DNA of 64,000 nt from IMG/VR virus record IMGVR_UViG_3300044646_001937, positions 62,001 through 126,000 of that record; one strand, given 5' to 3'. The stretch's first letter is position 1. Every line of letters begins with the position of its first letter. Below, piece by piece: positions 2,958-59,830 of this stretch. Position numbers and translations under genes: made by a program. Under the pieces are notes generated by a model. It was not told the origin of the DNA. It saw only the letters and a list, made by a program, of their open reading frames with translations, and ran no database searches.

Positions 2958-4721
2958 ATGATTGACCAAACAAAAACAATACCACAGTTAGATCCGGCAG
3001 TATCTTTGACAGACCAGGATTTGCTGATTGTGCACCAGGGTGCGCTAGATGGTATTGGAGGAGAGACAAAGAATTTTACACTAACATTACTAAGACAGGC
3101 TATTCTTGGCTCTTCTGAAAGCACAGCCAGAGAAGTAGAATTGCGTAATAATGGGCAGTATCTACAGTGGAGATATGTTGGCGACAGTAATTGGATAAAC
3201 CTTGTAGCAGTGGCTACATTGACTGGAGCTATTGGCGCTACAGGAGCTACCGGCGACACAGGATTAAGAGGACTTACAGGAAGCACAGGAGCCACTGGTA
3301 ATCAGGGAAGTACTGGTGATCATGGCAGTACTGGTGCAACAGGACCTAGCGGGCTTCAGGGAGCTTCTGGGGTTTCTGACAAATATCAGACCACATCCAA
3401 TACCCCATTAACTATTGGTGACGGTGTTAATAGTCAGCAAACTCTCACAGTAGGGTTAGGGTTAAGCTATACTATCAATCAAACATTGCTGATCTCTCAT
3501 CCATCAGAGACAGGCAAACATATGCATGGCGCTGTCAGCAGCTATAATCCTGCTACTGGTGAGCTAATTGTAGATATTACCTATCATAGCGGTAGTGGTA
3601 GCTATAGTAGCTGGATTGTTAATCTTGATGGTGCTGTAGGTGTTATGGGTAGCACCGGAGCTACAGGGGCTACCGGATATGGAGCTACTGGTGCTACAGG
3701 TCTAACTGGGGCAACAGGTCCTGCTGGGTCTAATTTTACAGTTCATCCTAACAGTGGTCTAGAATATCAGAACAGTGTACTCACAACTATCTATAACACA
3801 CTAATAGCTGACAGCGTTAATAGTGTTGCTGTAGGTGGTGCGGCTACTGCAGCTGCTGCTGCATGGAAAGCTAAGTCTCTTGTGGACGTTTTGGATACTA
3901 TTCTTTTTCCTGATATAGCTCCTACTTATACTGTACCTAGTATAAGTATAACTTATACGCAATCTGGTATACTAGAAATAGGTACACCTATTAATCAGAC
4001 TATTACAGTCACAGCTACCGAGAATGATGCTGATGCTTTCTCATATCTTTCAGTAAATCGTGACGGATCTTCAATATACAATTCTAATAGTCCTACAATA
4101 CAGTCAGCCTCAGACATAGGTGCACAGTATGGTTATGATAATCCTAATAACCCTAATAGAAAATATGTAGTTTCTCACACAGATACTACTGGCACAGTTT
4201 CAAGCAATACTGTCTCATGGAACGCTACTGGTAACTATGGTGCTGGACTAGCTAAAAATAATAATAAAGGAATTACTGATGCTAGAGCAGCTCTAGTTCG
4301 TTCTACCAATGCCCCTCAAGCAGCAAGCACGGGGTTTTCTTCTTCTAGTGTGAGTGTGTCAGGGATATATCCATACTTCTATGGTAAATCTAGTACATTA
4401 CCTACCGCCGCAGCTATTGCCGCTTTGATATCTGCAAACTCAGGACACAAAGTTCTATCCAGCGCTTCAGATAATATCACTGTAACTTTTAATGCTGCTG
4501 CCGAATACATCTGGCTAGCTGTACATAGCAGTTATCAGGCAAAGACCAAATGGTATAACACAGGATTGAACAATGGAAGTATAGGAGCCGGTCAATTTAT
4601 TCTAGCTCCTGTTCAATACGCAATAGACTCACCTCAATCACTTTGGTCAGGTGAAGCATATGATATTTATATAAGTTCTGGAGCAACTAACACAGAAGGC
4701 TCGATTATTTTTCAAAACTAG
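2958..4721 (+). CDS. collagen-like fibre protein
   Basis: GAT/GST Gly-X-Y tracts; ELRNNGQYLQWRYVGD motif of phage collagen proteins; C-terminal ~300 aa paralogous to 4764..7211. ATG 2958 preferred over GTG 2955. Confidence 0.75.
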   Translation: MIDQTKTIPQLDPAVSLTDQDLLIVHQGALDGIGGETKNFTLTLLRQAILGSSESTAREVELRNNGQYLQWRYVGDSNWINLVAVATLTGAIGATGATGDTGLRGLTGSTGATGNQGSTGDHGSTGATGPSGLQGASGVSDKYQTTSNTPLTIGDGVNSQQTLTVGLGLSYTINQTLLISHPSETGKHMHGAVSSYNPATGELIVDITYHSGSGSYSSWIVNLDGAVGVMGSTGATGATGYGATGATGLTGATGPAGSNFTVHPNSGLEYQNSVLTTIYNTLIADSVNSVAVGGAATAAAAAWKAKSLVDVLDTILFPDIAPTYTVPSISITYTQSGILEIGTPINQTITVTATENDADAFSYLSVNRDGSSIYNSNSPTIQSASDIGAQYGYDNPNNPNRKYVVSHTDTTGTVSSNTVSWNATGNYGAGLAKNNNKGITDARAALVRSTNAPQAASTGFSSSSVSVSGIYPYFYGKSSTLPTAAAIAALISANSGHKVLSSASDNITVTFNAAAEYIWLAVHSSYQAKTKWYNTGLNNGSIGAGQFILAPVQYAIDSPQSLWSGEAYDIYISSGATNTEGSIIFQN

Positions 4722-34705: not shown

Positions 34706-34791
34706 ATTACTATTATAATACTATTATTTTTTAGTGTATACACTAATTATACCCCCCCCCTGTGTAACCGGCTAGTCTTGTGGTATAGTAA

Positions 34792-34893
34792 TTTGAATCG
34801 GAGGTTTATAGCTTTTGATTCAAAGTTTGCCGAAAGGCATTTAATTTCATTGCCGTCGCAGCCTCCATGCGATGGTAAACCTAACCTGGAGGC
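34792..34893 (+). ncRNA. structured 5' leader, candidate pseudoknot translational regulator
   Basis: 8-bp hairpin, TGCC-GAAA-GGCA, and an 11-bp stem whose loop GCCTCCA complements TGGAGGC (SD). Confidence 0.5.
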
Positions 34894-34902
34894 ATAGAGT
34901 AT

Positions 34903-35337
34903 TTGAAAGTTATGTTTGGAATTATTTGCAAAATTAACGGGAAAGAAGCTTTGTATAACTGCGCGCCGTTCAGGTCTCACGATGTCGCATCGTGCGAGGC
35001 GGACATCTTAAATGAGATGTACCCAGAGAATAAGTATAGTGTAATTGATTTATGGGCGGCGACGACAAATAAACGTAGCTCGGGGGGGAAAAAATCCCTC
35101 CACGCACAAATCCACAGACTAATGAAGGCTAGCGGAGTAGTTTATTACCTTGCCAAATTTGGTGAGGGCATAGACTACAACTCCCACGGTCAGTGGGGCA
35201 TGATGTTCGCGCACGAGATTCACAAGAAGCTCGTTGACGCGGAACATGTGGTGACTGGTTACACACGAAACCATGCATTCCACAGGCTCGGCAGAGGCTG
35301 CGCCAATCGTGGAGCAGAAATCTACTGGAGTTGGTAG
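34903..35337 (+). CDS. hypothetical protein
   Basis: 144 aa; GGAGG 10 nt before TTG (ATG 34912 alternative); TGGTATAGT promoter at 34781. Confidence 0.6.
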   Translation: MKVMFGIICKINGKEALYNCAPFRSHDVASCEADILNEMYPENKYSVIDLWAATTNKRSSGGKKSLHAQIHRLMKASGVVYYLAKFGEGIDYNSHGQWGMMFAHEIHKKLVDAEHVVTGYTRNHAFHRLGRGCANRGAEIYWSW

Positions 35338-35340
35338 TTC

Positions 35341-35383
35341 ATGCGCACATCAGGGTTCAATTCCTTGATGTGCGCATTTTTTT
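35341..35383 (+). terminator. intrinsic terminator
   Basis: 15-bp stem ATGCGCACATCAGGG/CCTTGATGTGCGCAT, loop TTCAATT, T7. Confidence 0.85.
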
Positions 35384-35393
35384 AGCTATCAGA

Positions 35394-35429
35394 CAAAAAG
35401 AAAGCTGGCCTGGATTTCTCCAGACCAGC
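35394..35429 (-). terminator. intrinsic terminator
   Basis: GCTGGTCTGGA-GAAA-TCCAGGCCAGC then TTTCTTTTT on the minus strand. Confidence 0.8.
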
Positions 35430-35456
35430 CGTCTCGTTCGCAACGACTAACTAATA

Positions 35457-56824: not shown

Positions 56825-59800
56825 ATGCCGAATAAGAGCCACAAGTATGTTTTGGACAATGGGAAGTTGAAGAAAGTTCTTGGAACCACCAAAGCCAAGT
56901 ACAGCATTCCAGACCCATCATCCTTTTTCAGCCCTGTTACAAATCTGATTCCAGGTATCAGTTCTGTGTCTGGTGCTCGCGTATTGATTGGAGACAAGTC
57001 ATCCCTCCAGGCAATGACCCTGGTAAACAGAGAGGCTCCGCTGATACAGTCGGCCCCTAAGAACGTAAAAGGCGTAACCACCGAGAGCTTCAGCAAGCAG
57101 TTCGGTAAGCTTGTAACCGTAAACGCTAAAGCTGACGGAACAGTTACCAAGATAGACGAAGACCATATTGTGATCAAAGACAAGCTGAGTAAGCTTCATG
57201 AACACGACCTCTATAACAACTATATTGTAGGAAGAGAAAGCTACCTACACCACACTCCTGTGGTTAAGGTTGGAGACAAGGTCAAAGCTGGAGACCTCCT
57301 AGCCACATCGAACTATTCTGATGGTAAGGGTATGCTTGCTCTTGGTATGAACCTCAAGACAGCTATCATGCCCTACAGATCTCTTAACTTTGAAGATGCT
57401 CTGGTTATTTCCGAGACAGCAGCAAAGAAACTAGAGGGAGAGCAGCTGATTCCTGTACGCATGGAAATTGCTAGAGGGATGATAGTAGACAAAGACCAGT
57501 ACGTCTCGATGTTCCCTAATAAATTCTATAACGAGCAGTTGTCTAATATTGCTAGCAATGGTGTGGTCAAAAAAGGAACAGTATTGAACCATGGAGATCC
57601 AGTGATTCTAGCCTGCCAGCCTAAGTCGCTTAAATCTCTAGATATTCAGTTGGGTAATTTGTCTAAAGCTGTAAAGAATGCGTTCTCAGACGTAGGAACC
57701 ATCTGGGAGTATGAATATCCTGGTGAAGTCACAGACGTATCGGTCACATCAAAGCTAATAGCTGTTACGGTTAAGACAAAAAGACCTATGAGCTATGGAG
57801 ACAAACTAAACATGCCGTTCGGAGCAAAAGGCGTTGTACACATTGCTCCTGATACACAGATGCCCCAGGGAGAAGACGGCAAACCTGTAGATGTATTGCT
57901 CAACACTATGAGTATTACCTCTCGCGTTGCTCCAGGATTGGTAAATACTATCGGGCTAGGTAAGCTGGCAGAAAAGAAAGGAAAGGCCCTGAACATGTCG
58001 GGCTTTACCGAAGGTTCCGCAGTCCAAAAGGTGGCCGATGTTTTGGCTAAGAACAATATTAAAGATACCGAGAAACTGTATGATCCTATTTCAGGCAAAC
58101 ATATTGATGTGATGACAGGTCCGCTATACTTCAACAGATTACATCATATTGCCGAAGATAAAATATCTACAAGATCGGCAGCAACCACCTACGACATTAA
58201 CATGCAGCCCTCTAAAGCAGGATCGCATGAAAAAGCTAAACGTCTAGGTAATCTGGCTACCACCGTAGCACTATCAAACGACGCTAAAGCCGTACTTAGA
58301 GATGTTGCCACAGTCAGAGCCACAAAGAATGACGAGTTTTGGACAGCCTTGAAACTAGGGCATGCTCCACCTCCACCAAAAACCCCATTCATATTTGAGA
58401 AGTTCCTAAGCCACCTCAAAGGCTCTGGAGTGAATGTGGTTCAAGACGGTTCTAAGTTTCATATCATGCCTCAAACAGATAAAGATGTTGTAGCACTTTC
58501 ACAAGGAGCAATTACAGAACCTCTAGGCTACAAACTTAAAAAAGATGCACTCATGCATGAAGAAGGAGGACTTTTTGATCCTACACTCACAGGCATTCAT
58601 GGCAACAACTACAATCATGTGGAGTTAAATCATAAAATCCCAAACCCGATGGCTGAAGAGCATCTCAGAAAATTACTGAAGATGACTAAGGCAGCATATG
58701 ATGACGCTATCGCATCAGGAGAATTAGAGAATAAGCTTAAGGCTATGAATCTGGACGATAAGATCACAGAGCTAAAGCAATTGGTAGCGTCCAAGAGAAA
58801 ATCAGGCAGAGATGACGCTATTAAAGCTCTAAGCTTCCTGACAATGCTTAAAGAAAAAAACCTAAAGCCTGACGACATGATGCTCTCAAAGCTGGCGGTA
58901 ATTCCTGCCCAGTATAGACCTGTAATGGTTCAGGGAAATCAGACTCTGACCGCAGACGTGAACGAGCTCTATAAGGACGTGATGCTGGTTAACAAGTCAT
59001 ATGGAGAAGCCAAAGATTCTCCAGACATAGACAAGGAACATTTAACTGAAGCAAAAAAGCAAATCTATGCAGGAGTCAAAGCTGTCTATGGTTTGGGTGA
59101 ACCTATTAAGCAAAAAAGTGTAGAAAAGAACTACAAAGGCTTATTAGCATCGGCTTTAGGTTTGCAAGGCGGATCAGCCAAAGAATCTATGTTTCAGGCA
59201 AAGGTGGTAAACAAGCCTATTGATCTTGTAGGCAGAGCAGTGTTGCTTCCTGACTCTAAATTAGACTTGAATCAGGCTAGTATTCCTCAGCAGGTAGCAT
59301 GGAGTATCTATTCTCCTTTTGTTATTCGCAGATTGGTAAGACAAGGCATACCAGCCACCAAAGCCAGAGAATATTTAGACAACAAGCATCCTCTGGCACT
59401 GTCAGCACTACAGGACGAGATGACAGATCGCCCAGGCATTGTTACCAGAGATCCGCAACTTTCAAAGTACAACTTTCAGGGTATGTACCTAAAAATGAAT
59501 CCTGATCCAAAGGACTTTTCGATTAAATTAAATCCTTTGGTGTTTAAGGGGTATGGCGGAGACAGTGATGGTGACCAGCTTAACGTACAGCTACCAGCTA
59601 GTGAAGACGCAAAAGAGGAAGTTAAAGAGAAATTGCTTCCTGAAAAGAATCTTATCTATCACAGAACATTTAGTCCAATATTCACACCATCCAACGAAGC
59701 TGCTACCGGTTTATTCGCTGCAAGTTTTGAAGATAATAAGAATACTCCTAAGAAATACAGCTCTCCCCAGGACGTGGTTAAAGATTTTTTAGCAGGAAAG

Positions 59801-59830
59801 CTTGATGTTGGTGACAGAGTAGAGTTATAA
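56825..59830 (+). CDS. fusion of RNAP beta C-terminal part and beta' N-terminal part (catalytic subunit)
   Basis: beta motifs NFEDA, GDKL....G.KGV, RLHHIAEDK; beta' motifs NHVEL, VIPAQYRP, DLVGRAV, TRDPQL, GGDSDGDQ. Confidence 0.93.
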   Translation: MPNKSHKYVLDNGKLKKVLGTTKAKYSIPDPSSFFSPVTNLIPGISSVSGARVLIGDKSSLQAMTLVNREAPLIQSAPKNVKGVTTESFSKQFGKLVTVNAKADGTVTKIDEDHIVIKDKLSKLHEHDLYNNYIVGRESYLHHTPVVKVGDKVKAGDLLATSNYSDGKGMLALGMNLKTAIMPYRSLNFEDALVISETAAKKLEGEQLIPVRMEIARGMIVDKDQYVSMFPNKFYNEQLSNIASNGVVKKGTVLNHGDPVILACQPKSLKSLDIQLGNLSKAVKNAFSDVGTIWEYEYPGEVTDVSVTSKLIAVTVKTKRPMSYGDKLNMPFGAKGVVHIAPDTQMPQGEDGKPVDVLLNTMSITSRVAPGLVNTIGLGKLAEKKGKALNMSGFTEGSAVQKVADVLAKNNIKDTEKLYDPISGKHIDVMTGPLYFNRLHHIAEDKISTRSAATTYDINMQPSKAGSHEKAKRLGNLATTVALSNDAKAVLRDVATVRATKNDEFWTALKLGHAPPPPKTPFIFEKFLSHLKGSGVNVVQDGSKFHIMPQTDKDVVALSQGAITEPLGYKLKKDALMHEEGGLFDPTLTGIHGNNYNHVELNHKIPNPMAEEHLRKLLKMTKAAYDDAIASGELENKLKAMNLDDKITELKQLVASKRKSGRDDAIKALSFLTMLKEKNLKPDDMMLSKLAVIPAQYRPVMVQGNQTLTADVNELYKDVMLVNKSYGEAKDSPDIDKEHLTEAKKQIYAGVKAVYGLGEPIKQKSVEKNYKGLLASALGLQGGSAKESMFQAKVVNKPIDLVGRAVLLPDSKLDLNQASIPQQVAWSIYSPFVIRRLVRQGIPATKAREYLDNKHPLALSALQDEMTDRPGIVTRDPQLSKYNFQGMYLKMNPDPKDFSIKLNPLVFKGYGGDSDGDQLNVQLPASEDAKEEVKEKLLPEKNLIYHRTFSPIFTPSNEAATGLFAASFEDNKNTPKKYSSPQDVVKDFLAGKLDVGDRVEL

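What the first reader, a model, noticed from the sequence alone, without database searches (positions are those of the whole stretch)
34792..34905. Structured leader with an H-type pseudoknot that sequesters the Shine-Dalgarno
Seen, after the promoter at 34781: hairpin TTTGAATC/GATTCAAA (34792-34824); TGCC-GAAA-GGCA (34828-34839); and an 11-bp stem TTGCCGTCGCA/TGCGATGGTAA (34850-34878). The loop of that stem, GCCTCCA, is the exact complement of TGGAGGC (34887-34893), the SD 10 nt before TTG 34903. A second GGAGG (34800-34804) and AGGTTTA (34802-34808, complementary to TAAACCT 34876-34882) offer competing pairings. Known: SD-hiding pseudoknots occur in preQ1/SAM-II riboswitches and in autoregulatory operators. 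I could not match it to a known class. Inference: an undescribed riboswitch-like or protein-responsive switch, at one of the few genes here with an SD.
Basis: partly seen in the sequence, partly recalled or inferred. Interest (0 to 1): 0.7.

Follow-up and report, generated by a model that had tools for sequence, protein, structure and literature searches.

The report
Portable structured leader of a phage moron
The stretch is the 5' untranslated leader of a small add-on gene in a 204-kb freshwater phage; its 45-base core is identical in related phages in front of several unrelated genes, so it is probably a reusable expression module, but nothing here supports it hiding a working ribosome-binding site.

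Summary
The window lies in a 204,454-bp phage genome with terminal repeats. Bases 34733-35389 are a one-gene insert: promoter, roughly 115-nt leader, a 141-aa gene of unknown function, and a terminator. Many relatives lack this insert. Hairpin 1 is the 5'-terminal hairpin that commonly follows a promoter type repeated at least 10 times in the genome, and it covaries. The second GGAGG and its competing pairings are not conserved. P2, the 11-bp stem, its CCUCC loop and the GGAGG form an 88-nt module. The module's core (34857-34901) is identical in every copy found. It sits in front of at least four unrelated reading frames, and one contig has a crossover inside it. The Shine-Dalgarno reading fails. 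TTG 34903 is missing in relatives, ATG 34912 is the conserved start, GGAGG lies 16-19 nt upstream of it, and the genome shows no Shine-Dalgarno enrichment. The loop-GGAGG helix is plausible by energy and geometry but never varies, so covariation cannot test it. The 11-bp stem shows one compatible and two disruptive changes. No Rfam family matches. Best reading: an undescribed, conserved cis-acting leader module that also serves as the homology patch for swapping genes. A ligand or protein switch is possible but not shown.

The parts
34733..35389 (+). One-gene insert (moron cassette): promoter, leader, gene, terminator
   Evidence: Relatives L013 and L016-L036 join the 5' end of the 283-aa gene directly to the shared terminator region CAGACAAAAAG...GTCTCGTTCGCAAC. 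Both edges of the insert lie at a T-run followed by AG.
34752..34760 (+). C9 tract upstream of the promoter
   Evidence: Shared with two other promoters of the same type in the genome and with L002/L003. Function unknown.
34781..34789 (+). Extended -10 element TGGTATAGT; transcription start inferred at about 34795-34797
   Evidence: Consensus TGGTATAAT-ATATTGA at 10 or more sites in the genome, usually followed at once by a hairpin. The start site is inferred from spacing, not measured.
34792..34824 (+). Hairpin 1: 5'-terminal stem-loop of the transcript (15 pairs, loop UAU)
   Evidence: z = -5.0. Sense strand -14.1 against antisense -4.7 kcal/mol. In L014 five pairs change and all stay paired, including G.U to U.G. 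Weak in L002, whose promoter has a different origin.
34828..34839 (+). P2: 4-bp hairpin with a GAAA tetraloop; 5' edge of the portable module
   Evidence: Invariant in all module copies. Also present in the long leaders of L014 and L010. A decayed copy marks the other edge of the 67-aa gene insertion in L004.
34840..34856 (+). Variable part of the module: linker plus the lower 5' arm of the 11-bp stem
   Evidence: The only variable sites inside the module's 5' part: 34844, 34845, 34846, 34848, 34852, 34855 and 34856.
34850..34878 (+). S1: 11-bp stem-loop (34850-60 with 34868-78), 7-nt loop
   Evidence: -16.3 kcal/mol. G34852A keeps its pair, while G34855T and T34856C each break one.
34857..34901 (+). 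Invariant core of the module
   Evidence: Identical in the window, L002/L118-120, L003, L004/L108-117, L115 and Logan contigs of runs X24, X28, X17 and X30. Flanks are 89-92% identical.
34861..34867 (+). Loop GCCUCCA, 5' strand of helix S2
   Evidence: Exact complement of 34887-34893. Duplex energy -12.0 kcal/mol. Never varies.
34867..34878 (+). Three-codon mini reading frame ATG CGA TGG TAA inside the 3' arm of S1
   Evidence: Read directly from the sequence. Invariant because the core is invariant. No evidence that it is translated.
34879..34886 (+). 8-nt connector ACCUAACC (loop L3 of the pseudoknot model)
   Evidence: 8 nt is the minimum reported to span an 11-bp stem 1 in the IBV pseudoknot (PMC7618472).
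34887..34893 (+). UGGAGGC, 3' strand of S2; holds the GGAGG that was read as a Shine-Dalgarno
   Evidence: Ends 19 nt before ATG 34912. The gap is 17 nt and 16 nt in other junction types.
34894..34911 (+). A/U-rich spacer before the start codon; region of the 3' recombination junctions
   Evidence: Junctions with different genes lie after 34901, 34905 and 34914. TTG 34903-05 is TTT in L004 and L115.
34912..35337 (+). Gene for a 141-aa protein of unknown function (the cargo)
   Evidence: Gene callers start it at this ATG (P0001). No hit in Pfam, PHROGs or PADLOC. The structure model is unusable, pLDDT 48.8.
35341..35383 (+). Intrinsic terminator of the cassette (15-bp stem plus T7)
   Evidence: Other cargos carry a different terminator hairpin ahead of the same T-run.

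Best explanation
The finding is the 5' untranslated region of a one-gene moron in a freshwater jumbo phage.

The leader has two modules. The first is the promoter with its 5'-terminal hairpin 1, a generic unit repeated around the genome. It most likely protects the 5' end of the transcript.

The second is an 88-nt portable unit, 34826-34914. It consists of a GAAA-capped hairpin (P2), a fold centred on the CCUCC/GGAGG helix, and an A/U-rich spacer that places the start codon 16-19 nt after the helix.

I think this second unit acts in cis on the mRNA. It would be a compact structure just upstream of a Shine-Dalgarno-free, A/U-rich start site, and it would set or gate how well whatever gene follows is translated. 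The gating would most likely be through a trans-acting factor that recognises its sequence, in the manner of the T4 gene 32 operator, rather than through a metabolite.

Because the unit is conserved, it also serves as the homology patch through which these phages exchange the downstream gene.

Shown: the cassette nature of the locus, conservation of the core, its portability, a crossover inside it, ATG as the start, and the lack of Shine-Dalgarno use in the genome.

Inferred: that the RNA folds as drawn, that the helix forms as a pseudoknot together with the 11-bp stem, and that the effect is on translation.
For: Cassette: many relatives lack 34733-35389. Its promoter and terminator are identified.

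Generic hairpin 1: the same promoter plus immediate hairpin occurs elsewhere in the genome. The hairpin covaries in L014 and is specific to the sense strand.

Conservation: the window and L003 are 91.8% identical in the neighbouring gene (82.7% at third codon positions) and 89-91% in the promoter and hairpin region, but 58 of 58 in the core plus spacer. The window and L002 are 89.8% identical in the gene and 100 of 102 in the leader. The two geneX alleles are only 63-64% identical as proteins, yet follow the same core.

Portability: the core precedes MFGIIC..., MHTREEY.../MFTKEEY..., ATGAGCAGAGCA / ATGAGTACACTC..., and ATGCAGAATATT.... In L004 it lies between two genes.

Fixed distance to the ATG: 19, 17 or 16 nt.

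Crossover inside the core: L115 has the window-type left half and the L004-type right half and gene.

Fold: S1 is -16.3 and the S2 duplex -12.0 kcal/mol. The S2 helix appears in the consensus fold. S1 of 11 bp with an 8-nt L3 equals the minimal IBV geometry.

Context: the long leaders at the same locus in L014 and L010 are clearly structured, with 8 of 33 pairs changed on both sides.
Against: No base pair of the module shows a compensatory change. S2 never varies. S1 shows two disruptive changes against one compatible change. The single double change in the alternative fold is undone in L115.

The module alone folds only about 2 sd better than shuffles. A loop complement of this kind is expected about 0.8 times per genome by chance.

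Identity could partly reflect recent spread by recombination rather than selection on the RNA.

The module is single-copy in each genome searched, which is unusual for the target of a dedicated regulator.

There are no RNA data; the transcription start is inferred. The host is unknown. With a loop L1 of 0 nt, not all 7 pairs of S2 can form together with a full S1.
Confidence: 0.45

Rival explanations
1. An H-type pseudoknot hides a functional Shine-Dalgarno (GGAGG), and a ligand or protein shifts the balance to turn translation on or off, as in preQ1 and SAM-II riboswitches or autoregulatory operators.
For: The loop and the GGAGG segment are exactly complementary over 7 nt. The pairing is energetically favourable and the geometry is allowed. 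GGAGG is rare near starts in this genome, so its presence is notable. The core is conserved.
Against: TTG 34903 is not conserved, and ATG is the start. GGAGG lies 16-19 nt from that ATG, while the few genes here that carry GGAGG have it 4-13 nt away. The genome as a whole does not use Shine-Dalgarno sequences. There is no Rfam match. The downstream genes are unrelated and have no recognisable function, so no common metabolite logic appears. The proposed competing pairings are not conserved.
Confidence: 0.13
2. The module has no function of its own. The core is simply a shared patch of DNA that recombination keeps copying between phages, analogous to the PeSL motifs of T4-type phages, and its hairpins are incidental.
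For: The locus is a hot spot of insertion, deletion and replacement. L115 shows a crossover inside the core. Junctions with cargo lie at three different places. There is no covariation. PeSL motifs are a precedent (PMC2839356).
Against: No substitution occurs in 45 nt across more than 10 contigs from lake, freshwater and marine metagenome runs dated 2016-2025. Meanwhile the adjacent 31 nt vary at 7 sites and the flanks differ by 8-11%. The start codon keeps a near-constant distance from the core whatever the gene. PeSL motifs themselves are functional promoters and terminators, so even that precedent does not argue for a functionless patch.
Confidence: 0.22
3. The core works as DNA. It could be a binding site with nested inverted repeats for a phage protein, or a promoter for the phage's own RNA polymerase, placed just upstream of the gene it serves.
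For: Conservation at the level of sequence without covariation, and a fixed distance to the ATG, fit a promoter or operator. The phage encodes subunits of its own multisubunit RNA polymerase. In one Logan contig the module follows a stem-loop with no recognisable promoter between them.
Against: The module is single-copy in each genome, whereas a polymerase-specific promoter should recur. It bears no resemblance to the repeated TGGTATAAT type beyond 6 of 9 bases (read from the sequence). In the window a promoter of the repeated type lies about 100 nt upstream, with a sense-strand-specific RNA hairpin after it. S1 relies on G.U pairs, which exist only in the + strand RNA.
Confidence: 0.1
4. A different fold of the same module. 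There is no 11-bp stem. Instead the CCUCC/GGAGG helix carries a small apical hairpin (GAUGG-UAAA-CCUAAC, 34871-34885) that resembles the 11-nt GAAA-tetraloop receptor, and the GAAA loop of P2 docks into it. The result would be a compact tertiary fold of the kind seen in riboswitches and ribozymes.
For: The standard receptor is CCUAAG/UAUGG, and variants at the wobble pair still bind (PMC11381326). Here the strands are CCUAAC/GAUGG, with a GAAA tetraloop 32 nt upstream. This fold would explain why 34871-85 is invariant while the 5' arm of S1 takes disruptive changes. The consensus fold without pseudoknots predicts the G74-C81 and G75-C80 pairs.
Against: Such a co-occurrence appears in 26 of 40 shuffled genomes under my loose definition. 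Only two G-C pairs close the apical hairpin. The exact variant CCUAAC/GAUGG was not among the passages of the measured set that I read. There is no covariation.
Confidence: 0.1

Closest known systems
PeSL mobile regulatory cassettes of T4-type phages (PMC2839356, PMC4122927)
   Same: Conserved regulatory DNA flanks genes of unknown function in hypervariable regions. Close relatives differ by insertion, deletion and replacement of such genes, and crossovers fall inside the conserved motif. The same is seen here.
   Different: A PeSL is a terminator stem-loop followed by a sigma-70 promoter, and it is repeated many times per genome. Here the repeated unit is a promoter followed by a transcribed hairpin. 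The module in question is an 88-nt leader next to the start codon, single-copy per genome.
Translational operator of phage T4 gene 32 (PMC535899)
   Same: A pseudoknot at the 5' side is followed by a poorly structured A/U-rich tract that runs into the start codon. The predicted layout here is the same.
   Different: The T4 operator is autogenous, because the gene it controls encodes the single-strand binding protein that binds it. It also carries UUAAA/UAAA repeats and a normal Shine-Dalgarno. Here the downstream gene varies, there are no such repeats, and no partner protein is known.
Pseudoknot riboswitches that sequester the Shine-Dalgarno (preQ1-I/II, SAM-II, SAM-V)
   Same: The 3' strand of the second helix is a purine-rich GGAGG segment close to a start codon.
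   Different: No covariance model matches. GGAGG is 16-19 nt from the start. The downstream genes share no pathway. S1 is much longer (11 bp), and no conserved pocket-like loops can be argued from the data.
Minimal IBV-type H-type pseudoknot (PMC7618472)
   Same: Stem 1 of 11 bp, stem 2 of 6-7 bp and an 8-nt loop 3. This is the shortest loop reported to span such a stem.
   Different: The IBV element is a frameshift stimulator inside a reading frame with a slippery site upstream. Here it lies in a leader. Loop 1 is 0 nt here, so the junction must fray.
T4 RegB target sites (GGAG in the initiation regions of early mRNAs; PMC3014915)
   Same: A GGAG in the leader of what is probably an early transcript, which secondary structure could shield from a nuclease.
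   Different: The genome has no RegB homologue. The flanking sequence does not fit GGAGRAYARAA (read from the sequence).

Membership tests
Known RNA families (Rfam 15), including preQ1, SAM-II/V and other pseudoknot riboswitches | Match to the family's covariance model | tested here: not met
   No match at gathering score in the whole window. The local search at E up to 10 gave only chance-level hits (mir-958, htlv_FSE, snoR41, Yfr13). Twelve related loci also gave nothing.
Shine-Dalgarno-sequestering pseudoknot switch | The sequestered purine tract is a working Shine-Dalgarno, that is, within about 4-12 nt of the real start codon | tested here: not met
   The conserved start is ATG 34912. TTG 34903 is TTT, or absent, in relatives. 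The spacing is 19, 17 or 16 nt.
Shine-Dalgarno-sequestering pseudoknot switch | The organism uses Shine-Dalgarno-led initiation | tested here: not met
   Shine-Dalgarno-like motifs occur upstream of 14% of starts against 11% at random places. G is depleted, A/T is enriched, and T occupies position -1 in 64% of 180 genes. This covers phage genes only; the host is unknown.
Riboswitch (any class) | Association with genes of one pathway or transporter | tested here: not met
   At least four unrelated downstream genes, none with a family hit.
Riboswitch (any class) | Ligand binding that changes the fold | not testable with these tools
   Needs in-line probing or calorimetry.
H-type pseudoknot (structural class) | Two helices in crossing order, with loops long enough to span them | tested here: inconclusive
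   The order S1a-S2a-S1b-L3-S2b is present. An 8-nt L3 equals the reported minimum for an 11-bp S1. L1 is 0 nt, so 1-2 pairs at the junction must open (inference).
H-type pseudoknot (structural class) | Covariation in both helices | tested here: inconclusive
   None of the 7 S2 pairs varies. In S1, 8 of 11 pairs never vary, 1 changes compatibly and 2 are broken in some copies. The sample is four haplotypes in the alignment plus L115.
T4 gene 32-type translational operator | A 5' pseudoknot followed by an unstructured A/U-rich tract that reaches the start codon | tested here: inconclusive
   The layout is predicted from sequence and energy only.
T4 gene 32-type translational operator | Autogenous control: the regulated gene encodes the binding protein | tested here: not met
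   The downstream gene differs between copies.
PeSL-like mobile regulatory cassette | A conserved regulatory motif flanks genes of unknown function that are gained, lost or replaced between close relatives, with crossovers in the motif | tested here: met
   The crossover inside the core is in L115.
PeSL-like mobile regulatory cassette | The motif is a terminator stem-loop plus a sigma-70 promoter, repeated many times in the genome | tested here: not met
   The promoter-plus-hairpin unit is repeated, but its hairpin lies after the -10 element, inside the transcript. Terminators are separate. The 88-nt module is single-copy.
GAAA tetraloop / 11-nt receptor contact | A GAAA tetraloop together with a CCUAAG/UAUGG internal loop | tested here: inconclusive
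   GAAA on P2 and CCUAAC/GAUGG at 34871-85. The definition and tolerated variants come from PMC11381326. The co-occurrence is not beyond chance.
RegB-type nuclease target | A RegB homologue in the phage and the site consensus GGAGRAYARAA | tested here: not met
   PF10715 gave 11 bits against a cut-off of 27. The sequence here is GGAGGCAUAGA.

The most novel reading that the evidence does not exclude
The 88-nt unit is a self-contained, transferable translation-control device. It would be a pseudoknot or tetraloop-receptor fold recognised by one trans-acting factor (a phage or host protein, or a small molecule). That factor would give the same on/off behaviour to whichever gene the phage population slots in behind the unit, in a virus whose genes otherwise lack Shine-Dalgarno sequences. 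The same conserved RNA would then be both the regulator and the docking site for gene exchange.
Probability: 0.15. Interest if true: 0.65.

Novelty: new member of a known kind. Interest (0 to 1): 0.4.

Why it matters
Hypervariable regions of large phages are full of small genes of unknown function, and little is known about how their expression is set. Here a defined leader travels independently of the gene behind it and is kept letter-perfect across lakes and years. If it is a working expression module, it would show how such phages give newly acquired genes a ready-made control unit. It would also provide a compact, portable translation element for organisms that do not use Shine-Dalgarno sequences. 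If it is only a recombination patch, it still marks precisely where and how these genomes exchange genes.

Tried and rejected
RNA family and copy searches:
- Rfam at gathering score and at a permissive threshold found nothing.
- A covariance model of the module was run over the phage's own genome and four related records. It found one copy each in the window's genome and in L002's record; the three other records gave only weak hits (E 0.17 or worse) or none.
- Mismatch-tolerant searches for each sub-motif in the own genome found a single copy only.

Searches for more copies:
- Exact-word scans of the viral collection with five different words from the leader gave only four true contigs; all other hits were chance hits in coding DNA.
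- The single metagenome scan gave one more copy, of a known type.
- More distant homologues of the cargo either lack the leader (L007, 8-nt gap) or had no DNA available.

Structural ideas:
- An outer helix, 34843-49 with 34904-10, looked compensatory in L004. It is not significant and is broken in L115.
- The tetraloop-receptor idea is no more than a lead.

Protein and host questions:
- No RegA, RegB or ribosomal protein bS21 is encoded in the genome.
- Cargo function: no Pfam, PHROGs or PADLOC hit, and the Atlas gave nothing usable. The AlphaFold model had pLDDT 48.8, so no fold search was run.
- Host: a genome scan with the PduO protein found nothing, and the Atlas taxa are mixed. The host remains unknown.

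Coding and data limits:
- The core is not coding. All three + frames have stops, and the antisense reading frame is absent in L004.
- No RNA run is shown to hold the stretch, so there are no transcript data.
Full report
WHERE THE WINDOW LIES. The window is bases 62001-126000 of a 204,454-bp virus record with direct terminal repeats. It encodes tail-fibre-like proteins, PhoH, a B12-dependent ribonucleotide reductase, a PduO-type adenosyltransferase, a dCMP deaminase and a protein related to the beta subunit of multisubunit RNA polymerases. This makes it a jumbo phage. The sequencing runs that hold it are lake and freshwater metagenomes, with partial matches in marine runs. No isolate in GenBank's phage set resembles the locus. 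The host is unknown.

CHECK OF THE OBSERVATION. As RNA, hairpin 1 extends to 15 pairs, five of them G.U. It folds far better than shuffles (z = -5.0 for the part downstream of the inferred start) and far better than its antisense strand. The 11-bp stem is worth -16.3 kcal/mol and the 7-bp loop-GGAGG duplex -12.0 kcal/mol. The loop complement is not remarkable on its own. Hairpins of 9 or more pairs whose loop finds a 7-nt or longer complement within 40 nt occur 0.8 times per shuffled genome of this size, and twice in the real genome. The 88-nt module alone scores z about -2.

WHAT THE LOCUS IS. Bases 34733-35389 are an insert. In many relatives (L013, L016-L036), the start of the neighbouring 283-aa gene abuts the shared terminator region that in the window begins at about 35390. 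The insert carries:
- its own promoter, an extended -10 TGGTATAGT at 34781-89;
- a leader of about 115 nt;
- a 141-aa gene with no recognisable family;
- a strong terminator at 35341-83.
The promoter belongs to a type (TGGTATAAT-ATATTGA) found at 10 or more places in the genome. It is commonly followed at once by a hairpin. Hairpin 1 is therefore a generic 5'-terminal stem-loop and not part of a gene-specific switch. In L014 five of its pairs change and all remain paired. The second GGAGG, which sits in this hairpin, is replaced by GGAGC, AGAGC or GTAGT in relatives.

THE PORTABLE MODULE. Exact-word scans found the core in four viral contigs and one extra metagenome contig. Look-ups by protein added a dozen short contigs. 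Logan contigs from four further runs were also laid on the stretch. In all of them 34857-34901 is identical. The adjacent 34840-34856 varies at seven sites, and farther upstream the sequences differ by 8-11%. The window and L003 are 91.8% identical in the neighbouring gene (82.7% at third codon positions), yet 58 of 58 in the core plus spacer. The window and L002 are 89.8% identical in the gene and 100 of 102 in the leader.

The gene behind the module differs between copies:
- the 141-aa gene in the window and L002;
- a 200-aa gene in two alleles only 63-64% identical, in L003 and L004;
- one or two genes that begin ATGAGC... or ATGAGT... after a junction at 34901;
- a gene that begins ATGCAGAAT....
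In L004 the module lies between a 67-aa gene and the 200-aa gene, and a decayed copy of P2 sits at the other edge of that insertion. L115 combines the window's left half of the module with L004's right end and gene, so a crossover took place inside the invariant core. More distant homologues of the 141-aa gene lack the leader altogether. The module therefore belongs to the locus and to the exchange process, not to any one gene. It is single-copy in each genome searched.

THE SHINE-DALGARNO CLAIM. TTG 34903 is TTT in L004 and L115, and is absent in the junction type that ends at 34901. The ATG is conserved in every copy, and gene callers use it. GGAGG therefore ends 19, 17 or 16 nt before the start. 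Across 175-180 genes of this phage, Shine-Dalgarno-like motifs are no more frequent upstream of starts than at random places (14% against 11%). The upstream region is A/T-rich and poor in G, and T occupies position -1 in 64% of genes. The few genes that do carry GGAGG have it 4-13 nt from the ATG. On this evidence GGAGG is better read as one strand of a helix than as a ribosome-binding site.

THE FOLD. Two models fit.

Its dimensions (S1 of 11 bp, S2 of up to 7 bp, L3 of 8 nt) are those of the minimal IBV pseudoknot, in which 8 nt is the shortest loop that spans stem 1 (PMC7618472). Loop 1 would be 0 nt, so one or two junction pairs must open; this is my inference. A rough sum (the stacking of S2 added to S1, less a pseudoknot penalty of about 9.6 kcal/mol taken from my own knowledge of the Dirks-Pierce parameters) still favours the pseudoknot over the hairpin alone by several kcal/mol. 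That figure is an estimate, not a tool result.

Model II is the consensus fold without a pseudoknot. It keeps S2, drops S1 and adds outer pairs. It is the minimum-energy fold for L002 and L003, where S1 has a C.A mismatch. Its apical part, GAUGG-UAAA-CCUAAC, resembles the 11-nt receptor for GAAA tetraloops (CCUAAG/UAUGG; PMC11381326), and P2 carries a GAAA loop. The co-occurrence is not beyond chance, however.

Covariation decides nothing. S2 never varies. S1 has one compatible and two disruptive changes. The one double change in Model II is undone in L115. What both models share is that CCUCC pairs with GGAGG.

HOW IT MOST LIKELY WORKS. Four facts point to a role at the mRNA level, close to translation initiation:
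- invariance of a 45-nt stretch;
- a near-constant distance to the start codon whatever the gene;
- an A/U-rich, Shine-Dalgarno-free spacer;
- the location inside a transcript that begins about 100 nt upstream.
Conservation of sequence rather than of structure suggests recognition by a factor, as in the T4 gene 32 operator, where a 5' pseudoknot nucleates protein binding that spreads over an A/U-rich initiation region (PMC535899). It does not suggest a metabolite pocket. The same conservation makes the module the homology patch for gene exchange, as described for the PeSL motifs of T4-type phages (PMC2839356). I put this combined reading at 0.45. The last concerns the shape of the module rather than its function, so it overlaps the other readings. 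The long leaders found at the same locus in L014 and L010 are clearly structured, with 8 of 33 pairs changed on both sides. This raises the prior that leaders at this locus are functional RNAs.

COMPARISON WITH KNOWN SYSTEMS AND NOVELTY. The module matches no Rfam family. It fails the defining features of a Shine-Dalgarno-sequestering riboswitch: the spacing, the use of Shine-Dalgarno sequences and a shared gene context. It is not an autogenous operator, because the cargo varies. It shares the evolutionary behaviour of PeSLs but not their make-up. The phage has no RegA, RegB or bS21 that would suggest a known GGAG-centred mechanism. I file it as a new member of a known kind: a conserved cis-acting mRNA leader in a phage hypervariable region. 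Its unusual property is that it is exchanged independently of the gene it precedes.

LIMITS. There are only five leader haplotypes, all from close relatives. There are no transcript data, no host and no covariation. The transcription start is inferred from promoter spacing. The Logan contigs are short, and only four of more than 20 candidate runs could be examined.

Noticed in passing
L014:2230-2372(-) and L010:1700-1831(-) (the same DNA as L049 and L046): At the same locus, related phages carry a different and longer leader. It shares P2 but then forms a 15-bp hairpin with a conserved loop (GGUGAUUCGAAGCAUC) and a fully covarying stem, plus a long-range helix that competes with P2. Of 33 predicted pairs, 8 change on both sides between the two sequences. 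No Rfam family matches.
   Followed up: partly
window 30778, 34781 and 36504 (+), and further sites elsewhere in the genome: A repeated promoter type, TGGTATAAT-ATATTGA, is often followed immediately by a hairpin. Three copies, including the one studied here, have a C-rich tract upstream. It is unclear whether the host sigma factor or the phage's own polymerase reads it.
   Followed up: partly
genome 191813-192211, 28956-29383 and 48702-48985 (outside the window): ARAGORN calls a tmRNA with an unusually long tag peptide ending in LLAA, directly after one of the TGGTATAAT promoters. It also calls seven tRNA genes in two clusters.
   Followed up: no
whole genome (180 gene starts): T occupies position -1 before the ATG in 64% of genes. 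The 30 nt upstream are A/T-rich and poor in G, with no Shine-Dalgarno enrichment.
   Followed up: partly
window 34727-34734 and 35377-35385: Both edges of the inserted cassette lie at a T-run followed by AG, so the insert is bounded by a short direct repeat. Cassettes with other genes end in a different terminator hairpin before the same T-run.
   Followed up: partly
L002:3440-3520: In L002 the whole promoter unit (C-rich tract, CTGACA, 17-nt spacer, GATAAT, AATATGAACG...) is repeated right after the 141-aa gene, in front of the next small gene. That phage thus has tandem cassettes, each with the same promoter but a different leader.
   Followed up: no
window 34867-34878: A three-codon reading frame, ATG CGA TGG TAA, coincides with the 3' arm of the 11-bp stem and is invariant. 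No evidence bears on whether it is translated.
   Followed up: no
window 3923-3990: This is the only other place in the genome where a hairpin of 9 or more pairs has a full loop complement downstream (8 nt, TGTACCTA...TAGGTACA). It lies inside a long reading frame and also holds a TGGTATACT motif.
   Followed up: no
window 35403-35430 (-) and 35390-35450: A second terminator, for the convergent 166-aa gene, lies in a block (CAGACAAAAAG...GTCTCGTTCGCAAC) that many relatives share, including some that lack the cassette. It is the fixed right-hand anchor of the variable region.
   Followed up: partly
window 56825-59830: A 1001-aa protein matches phage families annotated as RNA polymerase beta subunit, so this phage probably has its own multisubunit polymerase.
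   Followed up: no
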